Below are positions 9,253-54,427 of a stretch of DNA of 64,000 bases, piece after piece. The notes under the pieces are model-generated. The model made no database searches and was not told the DNA's origin. It saw only the letters and a list, made by a program, of their open reading frames with translations. A program made the translations under genes and the position numbers. Within the stretch, counting starts at the first letter, position 1, and every line of letters starts with the position of its first letter. The stretch spans positions 1-64,000 of the IMG/VR virus record IMGVR_UViG_3300037087_000760, one strand, 5' to 3'.

Positions 9253-9399
9253 ATTTAATTTTTATTATATTTTCGAAATTTAATGTCGTTTAAAATGATG
9301 TTTATAAACGACATAATGACCGAAATCAGTCTGTAATGTAGGATATAAACAACAAAAAGTATATGTATAACATATCTTAAATTTTATTTATTTTATTTG

Positions 9400-9474
9400 A
9401 GTCAGAGGAGGGATTCGAACCCACGATTGTACGGTTTTGCAGACCGGTGCTTTTGACCACTCAGCCACCCTGAC
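9400..9474 (-). tRNA. tRNA-Cys(GCA)
   Basis: Full cloverleaf, anticodon loop CT-GCA-AA, T loop TTCGAAT, U73. Confidence 0.9.
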
Positions 9475-9593
9475 GAATTATTCTTCTTTGGATTCCTCTA
9501 ATCTTTTCCTGTCGAATTCTAACCATTCATCCAGTTTTTCATCAGTAAAAGAATTGAGTAATTCTACAAAATCCTCATATAAAGTATCCAAAT

Positions 9594-10214
9594 CTATTCC
9601 TTTTTCCATTTTACATTTAATGACTTATCGAATACTAACAAATATCTATGTTTACGACTTCGAGGTCTCCATTCACCCTCGACATCTTTCACTTTCCCCC
9701 TTGATTGCTTTATATATGTTCCATCTGGTTTTTTAATCCAGAAATCATTTTTGGGTTCTGTTAAACCATAATATTGAAAATTACATGCTTTATATATCGT
9801 ACCTAAATGAAAATCAGCATCAGCATAACTCAATATAACTCTAACTTTCGTATCTTTTCTCAATTGACGAATCGCCCTCGATACAAACCAACTGGTAATA
9901 TTATGTTCTACTTTTTGAATATCTGGATGAACACATAATCTACTCAACTCAAATAAACCCTCTTGATCATTTCTTTCCAATCCTAACATCCCCTTAGAAA
10001 GTTCTGGAACTGGAAAACCAGTGAAAATAATCACACCAACTAATTGTTCATTTTCAAACAGACCGTAATTAAAACCACTTTTAAATCCTCTGGAGATGTC
10101 TTTGAGATAATGAAATTTCAATAATAATTCACCAGCTTGTTCTTTGGTAATTCTACTCACATTGAAATTTTCTTTCATACCCTCATTTATAAACTCCAAA
10201 AATGTTTTTATCAT
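9594..10214 (-). CDS. mom: Mu Mom-like DNA adenine modification protein with CTS-like N-terminus
   Basis: FHYL, GLFENEQLVGVIIF, ELSRL, SWFVSRAIRQL, ILSYAD, HLGTIYKACNF; start MIKTFLEFINE just after late motif at 10220-10229. Confidence 0.8.
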   Translation of the reverse strand: MIKTFLEFINEGMKENFNVSRITKEQAGELLLKFHYLKDISRGFKSGFNYGLFENEQLVGVIIFTGFPVPELSKGMLGLERNDQEGLFELSRLCVHPDIQKVEHNITSWFVSRAIRQLRKDTKVRVILSYADADFHLGTIYKACNFQYYGLTEPKNDFWIKKPDGTYIKQSRGKVKDVEGEWRPRSRKHRYLLVFDKSLNVKWKKE

Positions 10215-10249
10215 GATTGTATATATTAATATACTCAATCATGAATTAG

Positions 10250-10342
10250 AAGCGGGGGTAGGAGTCGAACCCACTATCTAAAGGTTATGAGCCTTTAATG
10301 ATTTATGTTGACGAATCAACAATTCCGTTTCACTCTCCCGCA
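10250..10342 (-). tRNA. tRNA-Met(CAT), initiator-like, with hairpin inserted in D loop
   Basis: AAAGG-CTCATAA-CCTTT arm, T arm intact, 1:72 mismatch; D loop contains TGTTGA-TTCG-TCAACA. Confidence 0.7.
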
Positions 10343-10356
10343 ATGTATTAAAATAG

Positions 10357-10445
10357 TAGCGGATGTAAGATTCGAACTTACGACTTCCTTATGGGAAGTT
10401 TCAGCTTATGAGACTGAGGAGATAGGCCAACTTCTCTAATCCGCG
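10357..10445 (-). tRNA. tRNA-Met(CAT) with long variable arm
   Basis: C1:U72 mismatch, TCAGT-CTCATAA-GCTGA, variable hairpin ACTTCC-CATAA-GGAAGT. Confidence 0.75.
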
Positions 10446-10451
10446 ATGTGT

Positions 10452-10552
10452 GTCCTACTGTTGGTGCGACCAACCTTTCTGGAACTCATTATACCGTAGG
10501 TTAGAGCGACCAACTTTATTAGTTCAATGATATTTCCCTCTGAATTAGTAGG
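10452..10552 (-). ncRNA. Unknown tRNA-sized structured RNA
   Basis: Closed by GTCCTACT/AGTAGGAC; two similar GTTGG-TCGCn-CYAAC hairpins; sits between two tRNAs. Confidence 0.5.
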
Positions 10553-10558
10553 ACTTAG

Positions 10559-10630
<72 letters not shown>

Positions 10631-10635
10631 ATATA

Positions 10636-10884
10636 TTATTTCAATTCATGTCTGCACAATGGACATTCTTTAATTTTTATCAACCAATGAATAGTTCTCA
10701 CTACCGTTTTTTCTGGGTCATCAAAACACACCTTTTCACCATCCCAAATTCCTACGATTGATGTTTTCACAGTTTTACCATTAACTCTTTTTATGTTATG
10801 GTATTGAACTAAATCACCTTTCTTAATATCATCTAATTGTTTACCAATCAGATTTCCGTAATTGTCGTATTTACTTTCTTCCAT
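10636..10884 (-). CDS. Hypothetical protein inside tRNA cluster
   Basis: 82 aa ORF with own TAnnTTTG promoter. Confidence 0.65.
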   Translation of the reverse strand: MEESKYDNYGNLIGKQLDDIKKGDLVQYHNIKRVNGKTVKTSIVGIWDGEKVCFDDPEKTVVRTIHWLIKIKECPLCRHELK

Positions 10885-10888
10885 TTTA

Positions 10889-10920
10889 CAAAGATATAAA
10901 TAAATATTCTAATTAAAAAA
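10889..10920 (-). promoter_or_regulatory. Bacteroidota-type promoter (TATCTTTG with upstream T-run)
   Basis: Matches -7 consensus TAnnTTTG. Confidence 0.7.
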
Positions 10921-10926
10921 TCATTG

Positions 10927-10999
10927 AGATCGGAGAGGGAATCAAACCCCCGTCTCTGAGGTTGCAGCTCAGCACCTATTTACACTCGGCCATCCGACC
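10927..10999 (-). tRNA. tRNA-Cys(GCA)
   Basis: CTGAG-CTGCAAC-CTCAG arm, U73. Confidence 0.8.
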
Positions 11000-11004
11000 A
11001 TTTG

Positions 11005-11077
11005 AGCGATAAGTGGGGGTCAAACCCACGACCTTCAGCTTGGGAAGCTGACACTCTATCAACTGAGCTATTATCGC
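11005..11077 (-). tRNA. tRNA-Gly(CCC)
   Basis: TCAGC-TTCCCAA-GCTGA, U73. Confidence 0.9.
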
Positions 11078-11130
11078 ATCCGTTTGACACATCCTTTGAC
11101 ATCACCCTCTCTCCGTTATATCAAACAGCG

Positions 11131-11202
11131 AGCGAGTAATCAGAATCGAACTGACATCATCGGTATGGTAAGCCGATACACTACACATTGTGCTATACTC
11201 GC
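11131..11202 (-). tRNA. tRNA-Gly(ACC), 31:39 mismatch
   Basis: TCGGC-TTACCAT-ACCGA, Gly-type acceptor, U73. Confidence 0.75.
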
Positions 11203-11277
11203 GAATCAGTACCCGCACTTTCCGCCTTAATTATTCCCTGTTACACTGCGGTTAGGGAGTTGGTTATGATAGACCTG

Positions 11278-11360
11278 AGCGGGAGAAGGGATTCGAACCC
11301 TCACCTGAAGTTTGGAAGACTCCTATGCTAGCTTACGCGACCGTTAAACACCACTCCCGC
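11278..11360 (-). tRNA. tRNA-Gly(TCC) with D-loop insertion
   Basis: GGAGT-CTTCCAA-ACTTC; 19-nt D loop containing GC-GTAA-GC. Confidence 0.8.
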
Positions 11361-11371
11361 GAGTGATTTTG

Positions 11372-11442
11372 AGCAGATAATGAGAATCGAACTCACATCA
11401 AAAGATTGGAAATCTCTTACACTACCATTGTGCTATATCTGC
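11372..11442 (-). tRNA. tRNA-Gly(TCC)
   Basis: AGAGA-TTTCCAA-TCTTT, U73. Confidence 0.9.
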
Positions 11443-11448
11443 GTAAAA

Positions 11449-11553
11449 GGTCAGTATGTCGAATGTATTCGGACTGATTTTCGTTTTGCACATTCCTAAT
11501 CATCTGTCTTAACATCTCAGTTCACCGCCATTGTGCTACCGCGTTTACTGACC
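11449..11553 (-). ncRNA. Unknown tRNA-sized structured RNA
   Basis: Closed by GGTCAGTA/TACTGACC; carries D-arm-like TAGCACAATGG; fills the gap between two tRNAs. Confidence 0.45.
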
Positions 11554-11554
11554 T

Positions 11555-11629
11555 TGGAGCGGGATGCGGGATTTAAACCCGCGACCTGAAGTTTGGTAAA
11601 CTTCCGCTCTATCACTGAGCTAATCCCGC
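11555..11629 (-). tRNA. tRNA-Gly(ACC) with encoded CCA
   Basis: Perfect GAAGT-TTACCAA-ACTTC arm, U73-CCA. Confidence 0.9.
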
Positions 11630-11717
11630 GTGGGAGGCTATCTAAACTCTTTGACCCAATCAGATTTCTCCTGTCATGAGTTAACTTCGCCTTATTAGTT
11701 TTTCGAATGTTTTTTAG

Positions 11718-11789
11718 TAGCCCCGGCGGGAATCGAACCTGCATCCAGAAATTAGAAGTTTCTTGTTCTATCCATTGAACTACGGAGCC
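11718..11789 (-). tRNA. tRNA-Arg(TCT)
   Basis: AGAAA-CTTCTAA-TTTCT, canonical cloverleaf. Confidence 0.9.
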
Positions 11790-11838
11790 ATACTTTATAT
11801 AAACTATTTACCACCATTAAGTTTAATATTAATTATTG

Positions 11839-11916
11839 TAACCCTGAAGGGATTCGAACCCTCATTTTCATCCGTTATGCACAATCGAGTTTAGAAAACT
11901 CAGCCATTACAGGGCT
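11839..11916 (-). tRNA. D-armless tRNA-Arg(TCT)-like RNA with 22-nt variable region
   Basis: Acceptor AGCCCTG/CAGGGTT, TGAGT-TTTCTAA-ACTCG arm and T arm intact; only TAATGGC between acceptor and anticodon arm. Confidence 0.6.
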
Positions 11917-11921
11917 ATTTG

Positions 11922-12003
11922 TACCGATGGAGAGATTCGAACTCTCACTTCCGATGGAAACAAGTTCCTAAAACTTGCGTGTCTACCATTCCACCACACC
12001 GGC
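11922..12003 (-). tRNA. tRNA-Leu(TAG)
   Basis: CAAGT-TTTAGGA-ACTTG, class II variable arm, A73. Confidence 0.9.
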
Positions 12004-12029
12004 TTAAAAAGTTAAATAAGTTGTGATAT

Positions 12030-12124
12030 TGTACACCATACCCAACCCAGAGTCGAACTGGATTAGTTGGGGTCTCGAACCCCGCTTCACACAACCACCT
12101 ACTACCGTTCAGTATTATTCAACC
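12030..12124 (-). ncRNA. tRNA-derived element with two T-arm-like hairpins
   Basis: GGGG-TTCGAGA-CCCC and CCAG-TTCGACT-CTGG plus D-like TACT-GAACGGT-AGTA. Confidence 0.5.
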
Positions 12125-12128
12125 TTAG

Positions 12129-12198
12129 CAGTACAAGCAGGAATCGAACCTACATCCACCCTCTACTGAGGGTACTCTTTCCATTAAGCTACTGTACT
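12129..12198 (-). ncRNA. tRNA-like RNA lacking an anticodon loop (AGTA tetraloop)
   Basis: Acceptor, D and T arms canonical; CCCTC-AGTA-GAGGG in place of anticodon arm; G73. Confidence 0.75.
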
Positions 12199-12262
12199 TA
12201 CACATCAATTTTATTCTAGCTTATTATGATGTGATTTACACTTTTGATGTAAATATCTTTTA

Positions 12263-12330
12263 GTACTCTAAAAGGATTCGAACCTATACTCCTCGCTTAC
12301 GCGAGTGTGCTACCATTACACCATAAAGTC
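12263..12330 (-). ncRNA. tRNA-like RNA lacking an anticodon loop (GTAA GNRA tetraloop)
   Basis: GTGT-AATGGTA-GCAC D arm, CTCGC-GTAA-GCGAG, TTCGAAT T loop. Confidence 0.7.
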
Positions 12331-12430
12331 AACTTTCGTCATTGACACTGACATATCATTTCGGAAAGAACACATATTTTACTCCTTTCTGATTGTCAGA
12401 TCTTACTCGTTTCAAATTCCAGTGTTTTTG

Positions 12431-12503
12431 CAGGCAGTACGGGAGTTGAACCCGCTCCGAACGCCGTGACAGGGCGACATCTTAACCGTTTGACCTACTG
12501 CCT
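12431..12503 (-). tRNA. tRNA-Asp(GTC)
   Basis: CT-GTC-AC loop, G73. Confidence 0.85.
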
Positions 12504-12521
12504 ATGTAGGGGAACATTCTG

Positions 12522-12598
12522 CGGGCCCAGTGGGATTCAAACCCACCTGTTATTCCTGATCGACAGTCAGGTAGACACATCCAGCATCTCCTGAGCCC
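12522..12598 (-). tRNA. tRNA-Asp(GTC), divergent
   Basis: CCTGA-CTGTCGA-TCAGG, 8-nt variable loop, T loop TTTGAAT, G73. Confidence 0.75.
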
Positions 12599-12609
12599 AT
12601 TCATTATTG

Positions 12610-12709
12610 CGGTAGGAGTTGGGATCGAACCAACATATAAAGCATTCATCCTATCAGACTACTTCTGATGTCCATCGGTGGCACCCTATGAACTTTATGC
12701 TATCCTACC
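12610..12709 (-). ncRNA. tRNA-like RNA with intact acceptor/T arm and expanded centre lacking a canonical anticodon arm
   Basis: GGTAGGA/TCCTACC-G, GTTGG-TTCGATC-CCAAC, internal ATCAGA-AGTAG-TCTGAT hairpin. Confidence 0.65.
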
Positions 12710-12729
12710 ATTTATTTTTAGTATCCAAT

Positions 12730-12762
12730 ATGTCAAAGAACATATTATAATGTCAAAGAAAC
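12730..12762 (-). promoter_or_regulatory. Tandem boxA-like antitermination elements
   Basis: Two copies of TTCTTTGACAT on the tRNA-coding strand, 20 nt apart. Confidence 0.5.
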
Positions 12763-12770
12763 ATTATAAT

Positions 12771-12848
12771 TGGCGGTACATTACGGTTTCGAACCGTTGA
12801 TTTTACATGGGTGACAACCATGTTCCTCACCAAGAGGCCTAATGAACC
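12771..12848 (-). tRNA. tRNA-Asp(GTC) with encoded CCA
   Basis: CATGG-TTGTCAC-CCATG, G73-CCA. Confidence 0.8.
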
Positions 12849-41201: not shown

Positions 41202-41969
41202 TTAATACATTCTATTTGGTGGAATAAAATCTCTTTTCCATCTATAATGTCCATTTGTTATTCTGAATTCACAATAATAAGCTGATAAACTGGATATTAC
41301 TGATGATATTCCACCAATCAAATATGGAAAATTAAGAAGGGGCATTGAATAAGTTGGTGTTATTTTTTTAGTCGCCACTATTTTCCCATTAAAAAATAAT
41401 CTTATCGTATCAAAATATCTGGATACAGCCACATGATACCAATTTACAGCGTCGGGCCAAATACTTGTAATTCCTGACATGGTTAAAAAGAAGTCCCATG
41501 AACCAGCATTTTTTACCCCAAAAGTTAATCCTGTACTGTGGGTTAATAACGGGGAAATCCCACCATCAATAAAAAAACCGTAGAAATTATTTGAATTGAA
41601 AACACAACCATTACTTCCAAAATTTTGTCCGACTGCTGATATAGGACCACCACCAGTTACTTTTATCCAAAAATCTATGCAGAAATTATTTGTTCCAAAA
41701 TTCCAATCGCTTGTGTTAGTATCACAAGATAGTACACGAAATCCACCACCGAATGATGTTGCATTCCAACATGGACTATTATTGAAAACTCCACCAGTTG
41801 AAGATTGTGTTACTCCAGTTAATGTACATTGATGGGGGGAAGAAGATCCTCTCGACACATCCCAAAAATAAGGTTTTGGTGGTGGAATGGGCGTTATGAC
41901 AGTTTCATTTCCATGTGATAAAAATGTACAGAATTTATCATTACCAAATCCATTTTTATGTGTTATCAT
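41202..41969 (-). CDS. LamG/concanavalin-A-like virion protein
   Basis: FCIDFWIK, WYHVAVSR, LFFNGK, EFRITNG. Confidence 0.8.
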   Translation of the reverse strand: MITHKNGFGNDKFCTFLSHGNETVITPIPPPKPYFWDVSRGSSSPHQCTLTGVTQSSTGGVFNNSPCWNATSFGGGFRVLSCDTNTSDWNFGTNNFCIDFWIKVTGGGPISAVGQNFGSNGCVFNSNNFYGFFIDGGISPLLTHSTGLTFGVKNAGSWDFFLTMSGITSIWPDAVNWYHVAVSRYFDTIRLFFNGKIVATKKITPTYSMPLLNFPYLIGGISSVISSLSAYYCEFRITNGHYRWKRDFIPPNRMY

Positions 41970-43141
41970 ACATAAGGTATTATTTCAGGAACATCATTTA
42001 TAAATGTTAAAGCAACAGTTAAATCAGAAGCATCTGCCCCAACAGGAAAAATACCACCTTTTTGTGTGGTAGTTAATTCTAAAACATCACCCATTTTTAT
42101 GTTGTATTTATTAATATCAATTCCAATATCAGTAGAAGTATATGAAATGGAATTCATCTCAATTCCATCACCAGAATTATCCGTGCTAACCTTCTTCGAA
42201 TTAATTGTAGCATTTATTTTTGGTTGTATAGTTGCATTGGCATCGGATTTATGAACCCCCATTATTCTAACTAAAAGAGCAGAGTATTTTTGCCACTCAT
42301 ATCTAAATAAATTTAAATCGGATAATAAAGTTAATCCAGATACCATAGCATAAGATCCAGATATATTAAAATATTCATCTAAAACCATTTCCGGATTTCC
42401 ATAATATAAATTTTGTATATCGGGAAGATCACCAGTAAGAGGTGCACCAGCGATATAAATTGTATCCACTGTCATTCCAGTAATAATTCCATATTTCGAA
42501 ATCGAGGCTGTATTTCCACTATCAAAAAAGTATTTAAGAGGTGTTCCTATTTTTAAAGGACCGGGAGTTGTATTCGTATCCAGCCATGTCGTATCTGTAA
42601 ATGTGATACTATTTAAAGTTGTTGGAGTGATTGTAAATCCAGAGGGATTAATTAATGTCCAACGATCAGATGCTGTTGGTGTACTTCCATTCATACCAGA
42701 AGTACCAGCTGTTCCATTAACACCAACACCACTCGTTCCACTCGATCCACGGCCACTTGTTCCTGAACTACCTAAAAAAGTACCATCTTTCCCAGAACTA
42801 CCACTTGTCCCATGAGTACCAAGAAAACTACCATCTGCACCAGAAGTACCAGCTGTTCCACCTGTTCCCTGAGGTCCGACAACAGATAATCCACTTGTTC
42901 CAGCCGTTGCACTTGTTCCAGCACTTCCACTTTTACCTGATGTACCTGAAATACCACTCGTTCCATTTATACCAGCTGTTACCCCACTTTGAATATAAGT
43001 AATATTACCGTATTCATCCATTTGGGCTAATTTTCCACCCAATTGTGTTCCACCTGAGGTATCATATCCAAGAAGAAGCCACCCATCTCTGGGAAATTCT
43101 ACTTGTGTAAAATCTTGTACTTTAAGTTTTAATATACTCAT
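41966..43141 (-). CDS. Tail-fibre-like protein with GTSG repeats
   Basis: G-T-S-G-x repeat tract; late motif at 43162-43171. Confidence 0.65.
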   Translation of the reverse strand: MSILKLKVQDFTQVEFPRDGWLLLGYDTSGGTQLGGKLAQMDEYGNITYIQSGVTAGINGTSGISGTSGKSGSAGTSATAGTSGLSVVGPQGTGGTAGTSGADGSFLGTHGTSGSSGKDGTFLGSSGTSGRGSSGTSGVGVNGTAGTSGMNGSTPTASDRWTLINPSGFTITPTTLNSITFTDTTWLDTNTTPGPLKIGTPLKYFFDSGNTASISKYGIITGMTVDTIYIAGAPLTGDLPDIQNLYYGNPEMVLDEYFNISGSYAMVSGLTLLSDLNLFRYEWQKYSALLVRIMGVHKSDANATIQPKINATINSKKVSTDNSGDGIEMNSISYTSTDIGIDINKYNIKMGDVLELTTTQKGGIFPVGADASDLTVALTFINDVPEIIPYV

Positions 43142-43178
43142 TTGACTGTTTTCTTTTTGATTATATATTAAAATTTGA

Positions 43179-43206
43179 AAACTTCTTTTGAATTAAAGAA
43201 TATAAT
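43179..43206 (+). promoter_or_regulatory. AAACTTCT-N14-TATAAT promoter
   Basis: Member of recurrent 14-nt-spaced class. Confidence 0.6.
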
Positions 43207-43211
43207 AATCA

Positions 43212-43392
43212 CAAGGAGCCTGAATCTCTCTTGTCGTTTGTGGTGTCTCAACGAATGATGACACGGCTTCGATGGCTCGGCATAAAACCATTCGGTTTTC
43301 TCTTTCACTGATGTGCGAAGGTTACAAATATGTTTGAAAGAGTTTCACGATAGAAATGACCCCGATTTTTTCAGGTAAAATCGGGGTTTTTT
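43212..43392 (+). ncRNA. Unknown ~180-nt structured RNA
   Basis: GAGCC/GGCTC, GTGTC/GACAC, AAAACC/GGTTTT, CTCTTTCA/TGAAAGAG stems; own promoter and terminator; no ORF. Confidence 0.6.
43359..43392 (+). terminator. Intrinsic terminator
   Basis: ACCCCGATTTT/AAAATCGGGGT plus T-run. Confidence 0.85.
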
Positions 43393-43423
43393 ATTTTCAT
43401 AAATCGGCTAAAATAAATTCCTT

Positions 43424-43451
43424 AAACTTTCAATTTTTTTCTGAATAAAAT
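43424..43451 (+). promoter_or_regulatory. AAACTTTT-N14-TAAAAT promoter
   Basis: Recurrent class. Confidence 0.6.
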
Positions 43452-43457
43452 AAATAT

Positions 43458-43881
43458 CAGATAATTCAAAGGGAGTTGCTACCCAATGGATATTTGGTCG
43501 TGTACCCCAGACGTAACTGAAGTCGTTTGTAGCAGATCGTTAATTGTTACCCATTGAAAGGTGGAAAATCCTACTACACCTGAAAACATAGTGGGTAGTC
43601 TGTTTCACTCAACGAAGCCGCCCTAGCCTTTGAGGCGTAATCAAAGGACAATTTTTTCTTTTTATTGTCTAAAAAGATCGGTATATGTCCTCTTCCGTGA
43701 ATTAGGATTGTGTTGACTCTGAACACATAAAAGATTGAGCGGATTTTAGAACATCTATCCTTCAGGATGTCCGGCAGTTCATACGACAATGAAACTTTTT
43801 TATTCCTCTTTATCAAAACAAGTAGGAAGTTTTTAGCTAAAAATTACCCCCCGTCATATTTCAGGTATGTCGGGGGTTTTT
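43458..43881 (+). ncRNA. Unknown ~420-nt highly structured RNA
   Basis: Many hairpins and long-range complements, GC higher than flanks, own promoter and terminator, no credible ORF. Confidence 0.6.
43846..43881 (+). terminator. Intrinsic terminator
   Basis: CCCCC-rich stem with GGGGG partner plus T-run. Confidence 0.8.
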
Positions 43882-43887
43882 AATTTT

Positions 43888-43915
43888 AAACTTTTTATTT
43901 TTCCTACCTTATATT
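43888..43915 (+). promoter_or_regulatory. AAACTTTT-N14-TATATT promoter
   Basis: Recurrent class. Confidence 0.6.
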
Positions 43916-43939
43916 AAGAAAAAATCTCCTAAAATAATT

Positions 43940-44479
43940 ATGAGTACAATTGATCAATTCAGAGAAGTAATACAGAACTGCCAGCGTGTTTTTGTAGGGA
44001 AGATGGAAGATTATGGTCTTTCATGGAGAATACTCAGACCATCATCATTAACAGACCAAATTTTTATTAAAGCCAGTCGAATAAGAAGTTTGGAAGAAAA
44101 GAAAACATCAAAGATAAATGAGGGAGTAGAGCCAGAATATATTGGAATGATAAACTATTCGGTAATGGCTATAACTCAAATGAAATTTCCTTATAATGAA
44201 AATCCTAATTTATCAAAAGAAAATGTATTAGACATCTACATAACCGAGACAAATGAAGCTTTAGAATTGATGTTGAATAAAAATCATGATTATGATGAAG
44301 CTTGGAGAAAAATGAGAATTAGTAGTTTAACTGATATAATATTACAAAAACTTTTAAGAATAAAACAAATAGAAGATAACGATGGAACAACAAAAGTGTC
44401 AGAAGGATTAGAAGCCAATTATTATGACATCATTAATTATTCCATTTTTGCCCTGATAAAATTATCAGAGATTAAATAA
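43940..44479 (+). CDS. DUF1599 (nucleotide-modification-associated domain 1) tandem protein
   Basis: KMEDYGLSWR...RIRSLE...INYS and KNHDYDEAWR...RIKQIE...INYS. Confidence 0.8.
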   Translation: MSTIDQFREVIQNCQRVFVGKMEDYGLSWRILRPSSLTDQIFIKASRIRSLEEKKTSKINEGVEPEYIGMINYSVMAITQMKFPYNENPNLSKENVLDIYITETNEALELMLNKNHDYDEAWRKMRISSLTDIILQKLLRIKQIEDNDGTTKVSEGLEANYYDIINYSIFALIKLSEIK

Positions 44480-44535
44480 TACAACAAACAACAAACAAAA
44501 CAACAAACAACAAACAAAAAATAATCAACAAAACA
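44480..44535 (+). repeat. CAA/CAAA low-complexity tract in 5' leader
   Basis: ACAACAAACAACAAACAAA duplicated. Confidence 0.7.
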
Positions 44536-45423
44536 ATGAAAGAAAGAGAAACAAAGATTGGAACTTTCAGAATCGTCCAGAACGATACTGGATTAACATT
44601 TTATCATGATGATACTGGAATATGGTATTCACTCACACCAAATTCAGTAGAAGAACTTAAAAAATTTCTTACATTATCTGAAAAAAAGGAAATTTCTTAT
44701 TTAGATAGAACATATTTAGATAAAAGAAGAATATTAAGACAATTATCCATAAAAGATGAAATAAGAAATTATGTCAATATAATGTCCGATAAAGTATGGG
44801 AAAAATTATTATCTTCCATAGAACATACACAGAAATTTAATTTTCTTGAGGAACTTCAATTATATTTTCACATTAAATGTTTATTAATTGATGGGTATTT
44901 AGCTTTCGAAGTGGTATACAATGAAAAACAAACGGACATTATCGACTTATCTCCAATAGATCCTTGTAGTTTAACACCTATATTTCATTCATCCGCTGGT
45001 GAAAGAAAAAATGATTTTGATTGGATACAACATAATGATAATGAAAAACTTAAAAGAGTTTTATCTCAAAATCAAGTGATTTATATATCATACTCACCCG
45101 ATCATGAATATGGTCCGACTTCTTATGTTGAAGAATTAAAAGAGTCGTATGAAAAAGTTAAGACATTGGAAAATGAATTGATGGCATCAAGAATGAATCT
45201 TCCCGGTAATGTTGGAGAAAAATTGGGTGGAGAAATAGCTTTCAAACAATTAAAAAGAGCTGATAAGAAATTACAATTTATGTCTAAAATTCCTAAATCT
45301 ATTTTGAAAGAAGAAAAAACTTTTAGTGATGATGTAAGATATAAAACATTCTTGAATAGAATATGTAATATATTTGAAACTGATCTAATAGGAAAATTAA
45401 TCGAACTAAAAAATAATCTTTAA
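44536..45423 (+). CDS. Truncated portal (gp20)-like paralog
   Basis: IDGYLAFEVVY, IIDLSPIDP, QVIYISYS, SYVEELKESYEKVKTLE resemble the gp20 N-terminal half. Confidence 0.6.
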   Translation: MKERETKIGTFRIVQNDTGLTFYHDDTGIWYSLTPNSVEELKKFLTLSEKKEISYLDRTYLDKRRILRQLSIKDEIRNYVNIMSDKVWEKLLSSIEHTQKFNFLEELQLYFHIKCLLIDGYLAFEVVYNEKQTDIIDLSPIDPCSLTPIFHSSAGERKNDFDWIQHNDNEKLKRVLSQNQVIYISYSPDHEYGPTSYVEELKESYEKVKTLENELMASRMNLPGNVGEKLGGEIAFKQLKRADKKLQFMSKIPKSILKEEKTFSDDVRYKTFLNRICNIFETDLIGKLIELKNNL

Positions 45424-53748: not shown

Positions 53749-54186
53749 ATGAAAAAGTATTTATTAATTTTTTTGATGTTATTCCCAATCTTAGGAATAT
53801 CACAAACCAAAGAACAAGTTAAAGATTTAATCAAGAATAATAATCTGATTGGAATGTCTAAAGATTCTCTGGTTACTAAATTCCCAGATGGTTTCAATTC
53901 AGATACTTTAAATGGAATTAAGTATGATGTAGTCAAGGGTAGAATAAATAAGATCTTGGTGACTTGCTTCTTAACCCAAAATAAAAAGAATGAACAGCAA
54001 ACTTGTTTTCATTGTAGATTCTTTATCGTTATTACTGTATTACAATCCAGTGATATAAGTAACATATTGAATACCAATTTTAAAAGAATTAAAAATCAAT
54101 GGGAACAATATCGAGAAAAAGATACCTTAAATTGGTCAAGTAAAGAAACATTGTATACAGTTACATTAGAATCTGTAAAAAAATAA
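53749..54186 (+). CDS. Secreted hypothetical protein
   Basis: Signal peptide MKKYLLIFLMLFPILGISQ. Confidence 0.65.
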   Translation: MKKYLLIFLMLFPILGISQTKEQVKDLIKNNNLIGMSKDSLVTKFPDGFNSDTLNGIKYDVVKGRINKILVTCFLTQNKKNEQQTCFHCRFFIVITVLQSSDISNILNTNFKRIKNQWEQYREKDTLNWSSKETLYTVTLESVKK

Positions 54187-54212
54187 ACTTTTGATAAAAG
54201 ACATTGTATAAT
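54185..54212 (+). promoter_or_regulatory. AAACTTTT-N14-TATAAT promoter
   Basis: Recurrent class. Confidence 0.65.
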
Positions 54213-54218
54213 AAATAC

Positions 54219-54415
54219 AGGTCCCTGACTATACCTGTCGTTTTCTGTAAGTGTACGACAACAATTACCGTCTTAGAGTTTTCACGACACTAAACTCCGT
54301 CTTAGAGTTTTCACGACACTAAACTCCGTTTTTACTCTCATATAGTAGAGCTTTTTCCGTAAAAAATCAAACCCCAATGAAAGGTCAGGGAGAATTTCAT
54401 TGGGGTTTAACTTTT
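54219..54415 (+). ncRNA. Unknown ~190-nt RNA with tandem repeats and terminator-loop pairing
   Basis: Own promoter; 5' TCCCTGAC complementary to terminator loop GTCAGGGA; terminator AAACCCCAATGAAA/TTTCATTGGGGTTT. Confidence 0.6.
54268..54329 (+). repeat. Exact 29-bp tandem repeat, 2 copies plus 4 nt
   Basis: CCGTCTTAGAGTTTTCACGACACTAAACT x2 + CCGT. Confidence 0.95.
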
Positions 54416-54427
54416 ATAGAAAATTTT

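What the first reader, a model, noticed from the sequence alone, without database searches (positions are those of the whole stretch)
43458..43881. ~420-nt ornate ncRNA candidate with pseudoknot potential
Seen: hairpins TGCTAC/GTAGCA, CCTTTGA/TCAAAGG, GACAAT/ATTGTC, GTGTT/AACAC and ACATC/GATGT. Long-range complements include CAATGG/CCATTG, GTAAC/GTTAC, CAGAC/GTCTG and TCCTACT/AGTAGGA. It has its own promoter and terminator. Known: large ornate ncRNAs such as GOLLD and ROOL occur in phages. Inferred: a possibly new large RNA class or ribozyme-like fold.
Basis: partly seen in the sequence, partly recalled or inferred. Interest (0 to 1): 0.72.

Follow-up and report, generated by a model that had tools for sequence, protein, structure and literature searches.

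The report
New structured RNA gene in huge phage
The flagged stretch is a real, roughly 425-base noncoding RNA gene of a large AT-rich phage, with its own promoter and terminator; three related phages carry the same RNA with compensatory base-pair changes, but it matches no described RNA family and its function is unknown.

Summary
Window 43458-43885 (+) is one of two tandem promoter-to-terminator noncoding units in a 798-nt gap between a collagen-like tail-fibre gene and a DUF1599 gene of a 211-kb peat phage with 67 tRNA genes. Most of the proposed long-range pairs are at chance level and clash with the conserved fold. Syntenic contigs reached through the DUF1599 neighbour gave three homologues (L113, L121, L132; 385-390 nt). 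All four share a 5' domain of four hairpins with no broken pair and compensatory changes. They also share a conserved first middle hairpin, an A/U hairpin and an intrinsic terminator. G-U pairs make the fold specific to the + strand. The antisense 80-aa ORF has no homologue and is not conserved. Rfam, including GOLLD and ROOL, gives nothing. A CCUGA loop in the 5' domain is complementary to a UCAGG terminator loop in all eight units of this and a sister family (window units 1 and 3). That suggests a kissing loop, but the covariation test is not significant. The units are present or absent among close relatives. One metatranscriptome contig covers 43619-43782 only. Verdict: a genuine new phage RNA family, function unproven.

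The parts
43424..43451 (+). Promoter-like motif P2 of unit 2 (AAACTTT, 15 nt, TAAAAT). It places the start near 43458.
   Evidence: The fixed-spacing class AAACTTN-15-TAnAnT occurs 12 times in the 211-kb genome, against 4.4 +/- 2.0 in local shuffles and 0-6 at other spacings. Three of the 12 lie in this gap. The motif is conserved in L113, L121 and L132. It also stands before noncoding units, and near-matches stand before tRNA genes. No transcript 5' end has been mapped.
43458..43885 (+). Unit 2, the finding: a noncoding RNA of about 425 nt.
   Evidence: Homologues are L113:3051-3437, L121:3056-3441 and L132:3047-3433. There is no conserved ORF and no Rfam match. GC is 0.38 against 0.31 for the genome. 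A metatranscriptome contig covers 43619-43782.
43510..43524 (+). H1: GAC / GUC, 3 bp.
   Evidence: L132 has GAU/AUC, which is compensatory. The helix is short and therefore tentative.
43529..43550 (+). H2: GUAGCAG / UUGUUAC, 7 bp, with loop AUCGUUAA.
   Evidence: Two positions covary. Position 3 is A-U, G-C, A-U, A-U and position 4 is G-U, U-A, U-A, A-U in window, L113, L121 and L132. No pair is broken.
43551..43564 (+). H3: CCAU / GUGG hairpin with a GAAA-type loop, abutting H2.
   Evidence: It is kept in all four sequences, with one one-sided change (U-G against C-G). RNAalifold recovers it.
43570..43595 (+). H4: CCUAC / GUGGG, 5 bp, with a 16-nt loop that carries CCUGAAA (43579-43585).
   Evidence: Position 3 is U-G in the window, C-G in L113 and L121, and U-A in L132. 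Position 4 is A-U or G-U. The loop word CCUGA is invariant.
43627..43647 (+). R1: CCUUUGA / UCAAAGG, the first hairpin of the variable middle region.
Evidence: Equivalent hairpins sit at the same position in L113 and L121.
43777..43795 (+). Hairpin with loop ACGACA. It is the one clear window copy of the roughly 30-nt hairpin unit that repeats four to six times in L113 and L121 (loops UCGACA, UCGAUA, UCGUCA).
43828..43845 (+). H5: A/U-rich hairpin AGUUUUU / AAAAAUU just before the terminator.
   Evidence: It is present in all four sequences. One pair is G-U in the window and G-C in L113 and L121.
43848..43885 (+). Intrinsic terminator T2. Its loop UUUCAGG (43859-43865) is complementary to the H4 loop CCUGAAA.
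   Evidence: The potential duplex ACCUGAAA/UUUCAGGU is 8 bp, -8.9 kcal/mol.
43179..43397 (+). Unit 1, a sister RNA of about 185 nt. It has promoter P1 (43179-43206), a 5' hairpin 43211-43234 with a CCUGA loop, a hairpin with an ACGAUA loop, and terminator 43358-43388 with loop UUCAGGU.
   Evidence: Homologues are in L116 and L131, and unit 3 is a paralogue.
43888..43915 (+). Promoter-like motif P3 of the DUF1599 gene (43940-44479).
   Evidence: It is conserved in all relatives, including those with no RNA unit.
54185..54420 (+). Unit 3, a paralogue of unit 1. It has the same promoter class, a 5' hairpin with loop CCCUGAC, a perfect 29-nt repeat (2.1 copies) and a terminator with loop GUCAGGG.

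Best explanation
Window 43458-43885 (+) encodes a stand-alone structured noncoding RNA of about 425 nt. It belongs to a small, undescribed family of modular RNA cassettes carried by a clade of very large AT-rich phages.

Shown here:
- It lies between a promoter-type motif that recurs in the genome, including before other noncoding units, and a strong intrinsic terminator.
- Three diverged homologues sit at the same locus.
- The family keeps a 5' domain of four hairpins (H1-H4) through compensatory changes. It also keeps the first middle hairpin, an A/U hairpin and the terminator.
- The middle is a fast-evolving array of hairpins.
- No reading frame is conserved.

Inferred:
- The invariant CCUGA(A) in the H4 loop pairs with the invariant (U)UCAGG in the terminator loop. 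This kissing loop would tie the 5' domain to the 3' end within one molecule, or join molecules head to tail, and give a compact, nuclease-resistant scaffold.
- The hairpin array then displays repeated YCG(N)NAA-type loops as multivalent binding sites. On this reading the RNA acts in trans as a decoy or sponge for an RNA-binding factor of the host or the phage.
- Its presence or absence among close relatives fits an accessory role in host takeover or counter-defence.

The confidence given is for the whole statement. That it is a genuine structured RNA gene I put at about 0.8; the kissing loop at about 0.5; the decoy or sponge role at about 0.3.
For: Anatomy: the promoter motif is, and the terminator. 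The unit is single-copy in the genome.

Homologues: they were found through the DUF1599 neighbour and read.

Fold:
- 19-20 pairs in each of the 4 sequences, with none broken. Changes on both sides occur in H1, H2 (two positions, three pair types) and H4.
- RNAalifold finds the same four helices on its own. The consensus energy is -20.05 kcal/mol against -4.9 +/- 2.4 for column shuffles, 0 of 300 as good.
- G-U pairs in H2, H3, H4 and H5 would be A-C mismatches on the other strand, so the + strand is the functional one.
- R1 and H5 are conserved.

Kissing loop: CCUGA and UCAGG each occur in the expected loop in 8 of 8 units of both families, allowing duplexes of 6-10 bp. The flanking pair is A-U in six units, C-G in unit 3 and U-A in L116.

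Loop motif: CG.{1,2}AA is enriched in L113 (P=0.006), L121 (P=0.002) and the window (P=0.05).

Expression: in one metatranscriptome the only contig on 42300-45300 is 43619-43782, at depth 5.4, and both flanking genes are at zero.

Not coding.
Against: - Only four distinct sequences exist, and two of them (L113 and L121) are close, so covariation rests on few events.
- The kissing loop is not statistically established. Cognate against non-cognate loop pairing gives P=0.16, and both words could be conserved for another reason. Relatives with the 141-nt gap keep a UCAGG terminator with no CCUGA partner.
- The window's middle region differs from the homologues and has only three or four loops of the proposed type. 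L132 shows no enrichment (P=0.25).
- The RNA contig carries no strand information, covers 164 nt only and comes from a single run.
- No binding partner, target or phenotype is known.
- Close relatives do without the unit.
Confidence: 0.55

Rival explanations
1. It is a cis-acting leader or attenuator. On this reading unit 2 is a 5' regulatory region whose terminator sets read-through into the DUF1599 operon.
For: It has the same orientation as DUF1599 and lies directly upstream of it, with the terminator 55 nt before the start codon. A structured RNA followed by a terminator is the classic layout of an attenuator.
Against: A separate conserved promoter motif, P3, sits between the terminator and the gene, and it serves alone in relatives that lack the unit. 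Unit 3 of the sister family has the same design but faces the 3' end of a convergent gene. No alternative antiterminator pairing with the 5' half of the terminator stem was seen. The conserved complementarity involves the loop, not the stem.
Confidence: 0.1
2. It is an RNA mimic that counters a host defence. [quoted passage not shown] This is a specific version of the sponge idea.
For: The homologues carry four to six tandem hairpin units of about 30 nt. Unit 3 of the sister family has a perfect 29-nt repeat in 2.1 copies between a promoter and a terminator. The cassettes are accessory and variable among relatives, as anti-defence loci usually are. There is a precedent for phage RNA mimicry of ToxI (PMC3475682).
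Against: The window's own unit 2 has no detectable tandem repeat. The repeats in L113 and L121 are diverged, unlike type III antitoxin arrays. There is no adjacent toxin gene, no known host and no sequence likeness to any Rfam antitoxin RNA.
Confidence: 0.12
3. It is a DNA-level element, such as a replication origin or packaging region with repeated protein-binding words, or decaying non-functional filler between divergent operons. On this reading the hairpins are incidental.
For: It lies between divergently transcribed modules, a common site for origins. CCGT words recur in L113 and L121. The gap length varies from 85 to 798 nt among relatives, and L009 has a TnpB insertion there. The MFE z-scores are similar on both strands.
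Against: Compensatory changes keep the helices. Several conserved pairs are G-U, which is meaningful only in + strand RNA. The CCGT spacing is irregular, from 6 to 32 nt. Promoter and terminator bracket the unit in every homologue, and an RNA-library contig covers part of it while the flanks are empty.
Confidence: 0.06
4. It is protein-coding: either the antisense 80-aa ORF (43574-43816, -) or a small + strand ORF is the functional product.
For: The 80-codon open frame exists with a TTG start, and the RNA contig lies inside it. A 23-codon + strand ORF at 43485 follows an AAGGGAG word.
Against: There is no homologue among 5.8 billion proteins, and the ORF itself was never called as a gene. Nothing turned up in viral contigs or in PHROGs and Pfam. 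tblastn against the three homologous RNAs finds nothing, and open frames differ between L113 and L121. All three + frames contain all three stop codons, and the window has no suppressor tRNA, so recoding does not rescue a frame.
Confidence: 0.02

Closest known systems
GOLLD (RF01998) and ROOL (RF03087), the large ornate phage and prophage RNAs
   Same: All are phage-encoded noncoding RNAs of unknown function. They are longer than ordinary sRNAs and occur in genomes rich in tRNA genes. They carry conserved loop-loop complementarity. In ROOL, a kissing loop first read as tertiary from covariation proved to be intermolecular (PMC12286853), so the same ambiguity applies here.
   Different: There is no match to either covariance model, even at E up to 10. 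This RNA is shorter (385-430 nt, against more than 550-800) and has a much simpler fold, a string of hairpins. It is not next to a tRNA island. Only four sequences are known.
Csr/Rsm-type protein-sponge RNAs (CsrB, RsmY, RsmZ). The comparison is by design and rests on my own knowledge.
   Same: Both have a promoter, a series of hairpins showing a short recurring loop word, and an intrinsic terminator. Hairpin number varies between relatives.
   Different: The loop word here is of the YCG(N)NAA type, not GGA. No CsrA-like partner is known, there is no sequence relation, and a conserved 5' multi-hairpin domain is added. Membership is not claimed.
Type III antitoxin RNAs (ToxI) and phage pseudo-ToxI (PMC3475682)
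   Same: Both are arrays of 30-40-nt units between a promoter and a terminator, and there is a precedent for phage carriage as an anti-defence mimic.
   Different: Unit 2 of the window has no tandem repeat. The homologues' units are diverged hairpins, and there is no toxin gene alongside.
RNAs closed by 5'-3' long-range pairing or regulated by loop kissing (hok mRNA fold-back, RNA I/RNA II, CopA/CopT). From my own knowledge.
   Same: Complementary 6-9-nt words are exposed in hairpin loops, and the 5' and 3' ends could be tied together.
   Different: In those systems the contact controls translation or replication of a known target. Here both loops lie in the same noncoding transcript and no target is known.

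Membership tests
GOLLD / ROOL / any Rfam 15 family | Match to the family covariance model at or above its gathering score | tested here: not met
   The whole window gives only tRNAs at gathering score. With permissive filters, 43100-43960 gives nothing above 24 bits, and every such hit is driven by a terminator. The same holds for the homologues L113 and L132.
GOLLD / ROOL | Length above about 550 nt with many conserved pseudoknotted helices | tested here: not met
   The units are 385-430 nt. The conserved part is four or five simple hairpins plus a terminator.
GOLLD / ROOL | Frequent position beside tRNA islands in phages | tested here: not met
   The nearest tRNA gene ends at 12848, about 30 kb away. 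Only the promoter type recurs, in near-match form, before tRNA genes.
Independent sRNA gene ending in an intrinsic terminator | Own promoter, own Rho-independent terminator and no conserved ORF | tested here: met
   The promoter motif is conserved and over-represented. The terminator hairpin with its U-run is present in all four sequences. No conserved frame exists. The transcript ends have not been mapped.
Independent structured ncRNA | Secondary structure kept by compensatory substitutions | tested here: met
   H1, H2 and H4 carry changes on both sides and no pair is broken. The alifold z-score is -6.3 against column shuffles. The caveat is that only 4 sequences exist.
Pseudoknotted or kissing-loop RNA | Covariation between the two loops | tested here: inconclusive
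   Complementary words occur in 8 of 8 units, and the flanking pair takes three types (A-U, C-G, U-A). The permutation test gives P=0.16.
Protein-sponge RNA (Csr/Rsm-like design) | Many hairpin loops sharing one short word | tested here: inconclusive
   CG.{1,2}AA is enriched in L113 and L121 (P=0.006 and 0.002), borderline in the window (5 against 2.25, P=0.05) and not enriched in L132.
Protein-sponge RNA (Csr/Rsm-like design) | A cognate RNA-binding protein | not testable with these tools
   The host is unknown and there are no binding data.
Type III antitoxin RNA | Tandem near-identical repeats of 30-40 nt | tested here: not met
   TRF finds none in 43440-43900 and none in L113. L121 has 2 copies at 83%. 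Unit 3 of the sister family does have 2.1 perfect copies of 29 nt.
Type III antitoxin RNA | An adjacent endoribonuclease toxin gene after the terminator | tested here: not met
   The downstream gene is DUF1599, a nucleotide-modification-associated domain.
Self-splicing intron or ribozyme | Match to a known catalytic RNA model | tested here: not met
   No group I, group II or small-ribozyme hit appears. The only trace is Intron_gpI at 10.7 bits, E=5, in L132. A new kind of ribozyme cannot be excluded by computation.
TnpB omega RNA or transposon end | An adjacent or remnant tnpB gene, with likeness to the element in L009 | tested here: not met
   The genome has no TnpB homologue and the gap has no similarity to L009.

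The most novel reading that the evidence does not exclude
The complementary CCUGA and UCAGG loops, conserved in every unit of two related RNA families, may act between molecules rather than within one. The RNAs would then assemble head to tail into rings or chains, possibly mixing units 1, 2 and 3. That would give an RNA-only scaffold made from sRNA-sized modules, with a multivalent hairpin array that traps a host factor. It would be a small modular counterpart of the ROOL and GOLLD assemblies in huge phages.
Probability: 0.1. Interest if true: 0.85.

Novelty: new variant of a known kind. Interest (0 to 1): 0.58.

Why it matters
Very large phages carry long stretches that gene callers leave empty, and little is known about their RNA genes beyond tRNAs. 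Here a single promoter type heads at least three noncoding units in the window. These units form two related, undescribed RNA families built from shared modules: a 5' hairpin with a CCUGA loop, hairpins with CGA-type loops, and a terminator with a UCAGG loop. The cassettes come and go among close relatives at one locus, which is how accessory host-takeover or counter-defence genes behave.

If the loop complementarity is real, it gives a simple, testable case of an RNA closed or multimerised through its own terminator loop. The RNA is short enough for chemical probing, native gels and cryo-EM.

Tried and rejected
1. Direct DNA similarity found nothing. I tried GenBank phages, eight IMG/VR loci holding DUF1599 relatives, 80 metagenome loci and four whole related phage records. 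Relatives at 54-63% protein identity have no long gap at this position.
2. Exact-pattern scans with the conserved core gave nothing in IMG/VR. They gave one chance hit in a Bacteroidia MAG, which is a terminator after a bacterial gene. A terminator-plus-promoter pattern gave six chance hits in coding DNA.
3. The covariance model R1 of the 5' domain finds only the four known copies. I searched the held loci, the own genome and four related records.
4. Antisense ORF: rejected.
5. Stop-codon recoding: rejected. All three stop codons occur in all three + frames and the window has no suppressor tRNA.
6. TnpB or omega-RNA remnant, suggested by the TnpB gene at the same spot in L009: rejected.
7. Units 1 and 2 as tandem duplicates: only the terminator and promoter modules are alike. 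The bodies are not significantly similar.
8. A closing helix P1 around H1-H4: L132 has an 11-bp helix there, but the register differs in the other three sequences. I left it as tentative.
9. Trans targets: the complements of the conserved single-stranded blocks have no telling match in the genome.
10. Infernal and MAFFT both mis-register the window's H4 by one column. The pair counts therefore come from a regex-anchored alignment made in a script.
11. A search of Bacteroidia genomes with R1 was not possible, because no genome handle was available.

Full report
**Setting.** The window is the first 64 kb of a 210,983-bp viral record with 30.6% GC. Sequencing runs that hold it are peat metagenomes. 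The genome carries 13-14 tRNA genes in the window and 54 more outside it. Relatives include a 590-kb scaffold, so this is a clade of very large phages. The finding lies in the longest tRNA-free gap of the window, 43142-43939 (798 nt). That gap separates a collagen-like tail-fibre gene (41966-43141, minus strand) from a DUF1599 gene (43940-44479, plus strand).

**Checking the observation.**
- Local hairpins are more frequent than in shuffles: 13 against 5.2 +/- 2.5.
- About 85 complementary pairs of at least 5 nt are expected by chance in 424 nt, so the long-range pairs carry no weight on their own.
- The whole-unit folding z-score is modest and similar on both strands: -2.7 and -2.5.
- A strong terminator hairpin with a U-run sits at 43848-43885.
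- A motif AAACTTT-N15-TAAAAT sits at 43424-43451. The same motif with the same spacing occurs at 43179 and 43888 in this gap. It occurs 12 times in the genome, against 4.4 +/- 2.0 in local shuffles and 0-6 at neighbouring spacings. Other copies precede noncoding units, and near-matches at spacing 14 and 17 precede tRNA genes.

The gap therefore reads as promoter 1, unit 1, terminator 1, promoter 2, unit 2 (the finding), terminator 2, promoter 3, DUF1599.

**Known families and coding.**
- Rfam 15 gives nothing but tRNAs at gathering score. With permissive filters it gives only weak terminator-driven hits.
- All three plus-strand frames contain all three stop codons, and the window has no suppressor tRNA.
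- The antisense 80-aa ORF has no relative among 5.8 billion proteins and was never called as a gene. It has no relative in viral contigs and no PHROG or Pfam match.

**Finding homologues.** DNA searches failed. Relatives at 54-63% identity in DUF1599 have no such gap. A protein search with DUF1599 gave relatives at 69-79% identity, and their contigs show the same gene order. The gap is strikingly variable among them:

| Locus | Gap length | Content |
|---|---|---|
| window | 798 nt | unit 1 + unit 2 |
| L113 | 618 nt | unit 2 only |
| L121 | 517 nt | unit 2 only |
| L132 | 523 nt | unit 2 only |
| L116 | 310 nt | unit 1 type only |
| L131 | contig starts in the gap | unit 1 type only |
| L119, L122, L124 | 141 nt | a terminator only |
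| L125 / L126 | 120 / 85 nt | no unit |
| L009 | contig ends in the gap | a TnpB gene |

The cassettes are therefore accessory and are gained or lost independently.

**Structure of unit 2.** The four distinct sequences (window, L113, L121, L132) align over the promoter, a 5' block of about 100 nt, the first middle hairpin and the 3' end. RNAalifold proposes four hairpins. A regex-anchored table shows every pair kept in every sequence:
- **H1:** GAC/GUC, which becomes GAU/AUC in L132.
- **H2:** GUAGCAG/UUGUUAC in the window, GUGUCAG/UUGACAC in L113, GUAUCAG/UUGAUAC in L121 and GUAACAG/UUGUUAC in L132.
- **H3:** CCAY/GUGG.
- **H4:** CCUAC/GUGGG in the window, CCCAC/GUGGG in L113, CCCGC/GUGGG in L121 and CCUAC/GUAGG in L132.

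On this alignment RNAalifold recovers the same helices at -20.05 kcal/mol, against -4.9 +/- 2.4 for column shuffles, with 0 of 300 as good. Several conserved pairs are G-U, so the fold exists only in plus-strand RNA. The hairpin CCUUUGA/UCAAAGG (R1) and an A/U hairpin before the terminator are also conserved. The middle region differs. L113 and L121 have four to six hairpin units of about 30 nt with loops such as UCGACA, separated by CCGUAU. The window keeps one clear copy (43777-43795) plus unrelated hairpins.

TGCTAC/GTAGCA, GTAAC/GTTAC and TCCTACT/AGTAGGA each use a strand of H2 or H4. CAATGG/CCATTG uses the H3 strand and an insertion found only in the window. AGTAGGA also lies in such an insertion. 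CAGAC/GTCTG flanks the 5' domain but carries a mismatch in the three homologues.

**A shared loop-loop complementarity.** The H4 loop always contains CCUGA, and the terminator loop always contains UCAGG. The same holds for unit 1, for unit 3 (54185-54420), and for the unit-1-type RNAs in L116 and L131, where CCUGA sits in the loop of the very first hairpin. Potential duplexes are 6-10 bp and -6.3 to -14.8 kcal/mol. The loops are more conserved than the stems that carry them. The pair next to the core is A-U in six units, C-G in unit 3 (CCCUGAC with GUCAGGG) and U-A in L116 (CCUGAU with AUCAGG). A permutation test of cognate against non-cognate partners is not significant (P=0.16). The 141-nt relatives keep a UCAGG terminator with no partner. 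I therefore treat the kissing loop as a good hypothesis, not a result. In ROOL, a covariation-derived kissing loop proved to be intermolecular (PMC12286853), so both readings stay open here.

**Expression.** Of four runs laid on 42300-45300, one peat metatranscriptome holds a single exact 164-nt contig, 43619-43782, at word depth 5.4, and nothing on the flanking genes. This fits an RNA more abundant than its neighbours. It carries no strand information, it is one run, and it covers only the middle of the unit.

**Interpretation.** I am fairly confident (about 0.8) that unit 2 is a genuine structured noncoding RNA gene of a new family. How it works is inferred. My best guess is a compact trans-acting RNA whose ends are tied by the loop contact and whose hairpin array binds a protein, that is, a decoy or sponge. 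This fits its accessory distribution and the repeated loop words, but it has no direct support.

Rivals are a cis leader for DUF1599, a defence-mimic RNA, a DNA-level element and a coding gene.
- The cis leader is weakened by the intervening promoter P3 and by unit 3, which faces a convergent gene.
- The defence-mimic RNA is a special case of the decoy idea. The precedent is PMC3475682.
- The DNA-level element is weakened by the strand-specific G-U pairs.
- The coding gene is rejected.

**Limits.** Only four sequences exist, two of them close. No transcript ends have been mapped, the host is unknown, and public collections beyond those served could not be searched with the covariance model.

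Noticed in passing
window 43179-43397 (+): Unit 1 is a second promoter-to-terminator noncoding unit of about 185 nt in the same gap. Its first hairpin is ACAAGG/CUUGU with a CCUGA loop, followed by GUCGUUUG, then a hairpin with an ACGAUA loop and a terminator with loop UUCAGGU. Homologues with compensatory stem changes are in L116 (ACAAAU/AUUUGU) and L131 (GGAUUA/UAAUCC). MFE z-score -2.7.
   Followed up: partly
window 54185-54420 (+): Unit 3 is a paralogue of unit 1, lying between a gene end and a convergent gene. It has the same promoter class, a 5' hairpin with loop CCCUGAC and a terminator with loop GUCAGGG, giving a potential 9-bp duplex. It also has a perfect 29-nt tandem repeat in 2.1 copies at 54268-54329, each copy a hairpin with an ACGACA-type loop. 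The layout resembles a type III antitoxin array, but no toxin gene is present.
   Followed up: partly
window 43179, 43424, 43888, 54185; G000 81568(-), 98555, 109258, 116608(-), 155642, 196035(-) and others: A promoter-like class AAACTTN-15-TAnAnT is over-represented at exactly this spacing, 12 against about 4.4. It heads noncoding units. Near-matches at 154381 and 158379 stand directly before tRNA genes. It differs from the usual Bacteroidota -33/-7 promoter form.
   Followed up: partly
window 9399-12848 and G000 68.6-73.2, 88.9-91.4, 98.4, 154.4-158.5, 169.2-170.0 kb: The genome has about 67 tRNA genes in several arrays. ARAGORN reports one at 12128-12198 with a two-base anticodon. Four Rfam tRNA hits outside the window are 128-130 nt long and may carry an intron or insert (L106 4936-5064, 5296-5423, 5549-5678; L109 11311-11439).
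   Followed up: no
G000 98555-98935 (L106 14555-14935) and 155642-155930 (L109 11642-11930); also G000 154500-155600: There are further promoter-to-terminator units with no ORF outside the window. The first has a repeated word GAAGCGGU...AGAGUUACUUCAU. A GC-rich block of about 1 kb around a tRNA gene has no Rfam match at gathering score.
   Followed up: no
L009 1-696 (-); L132 4047-5270 (-): TnpB (OrfB_IS605 type) genes are inserted at or next to the same locus in two relatives. In L009 the gene replaces the RNA cassettes, and in L132 it lies just after DUF1599. The locus appears to be a hot spot for insertions.
   Followed up: partly
window 43761-43766: There is a second UUCAGG inside unit 2, partly in the loop of the hairpin ACAUC/GAUGU. 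It could compete with the terminator loop for CCUGAA. It is not present in the homologues.
   Followed up: no
window 43264-43274 versus 43610-43620; 43231-43240 versus 43780-43789: Two stretches of 10-11 nt in unit 1 are complementary to unit 2 at 90-91%. The second pairs unit 1's UUGUCGU with unit 2's ACGACAA loop. About 0.6 such matches are expected by chance, so this is only a lead.
   Followed up: no
window 41966-43141 (-), repeats at 42849-42955: The tail-fibre-like gene has collagen-type Gly-X-Y tracts with 9- and 18-nt DNA repeats. Reads from other organisms cross-map there in metagenome and metatranscriptome runs.
   Followed up: no
L113 4051-4791, L121 4052-4792: In the two closest carriers of unit 2, a class I methyltransferase gene follows DUF1599, which is a nucleotide-modification-associated domain. 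The window instead has an unrelated 295-aa gene there.
   Followed up: no
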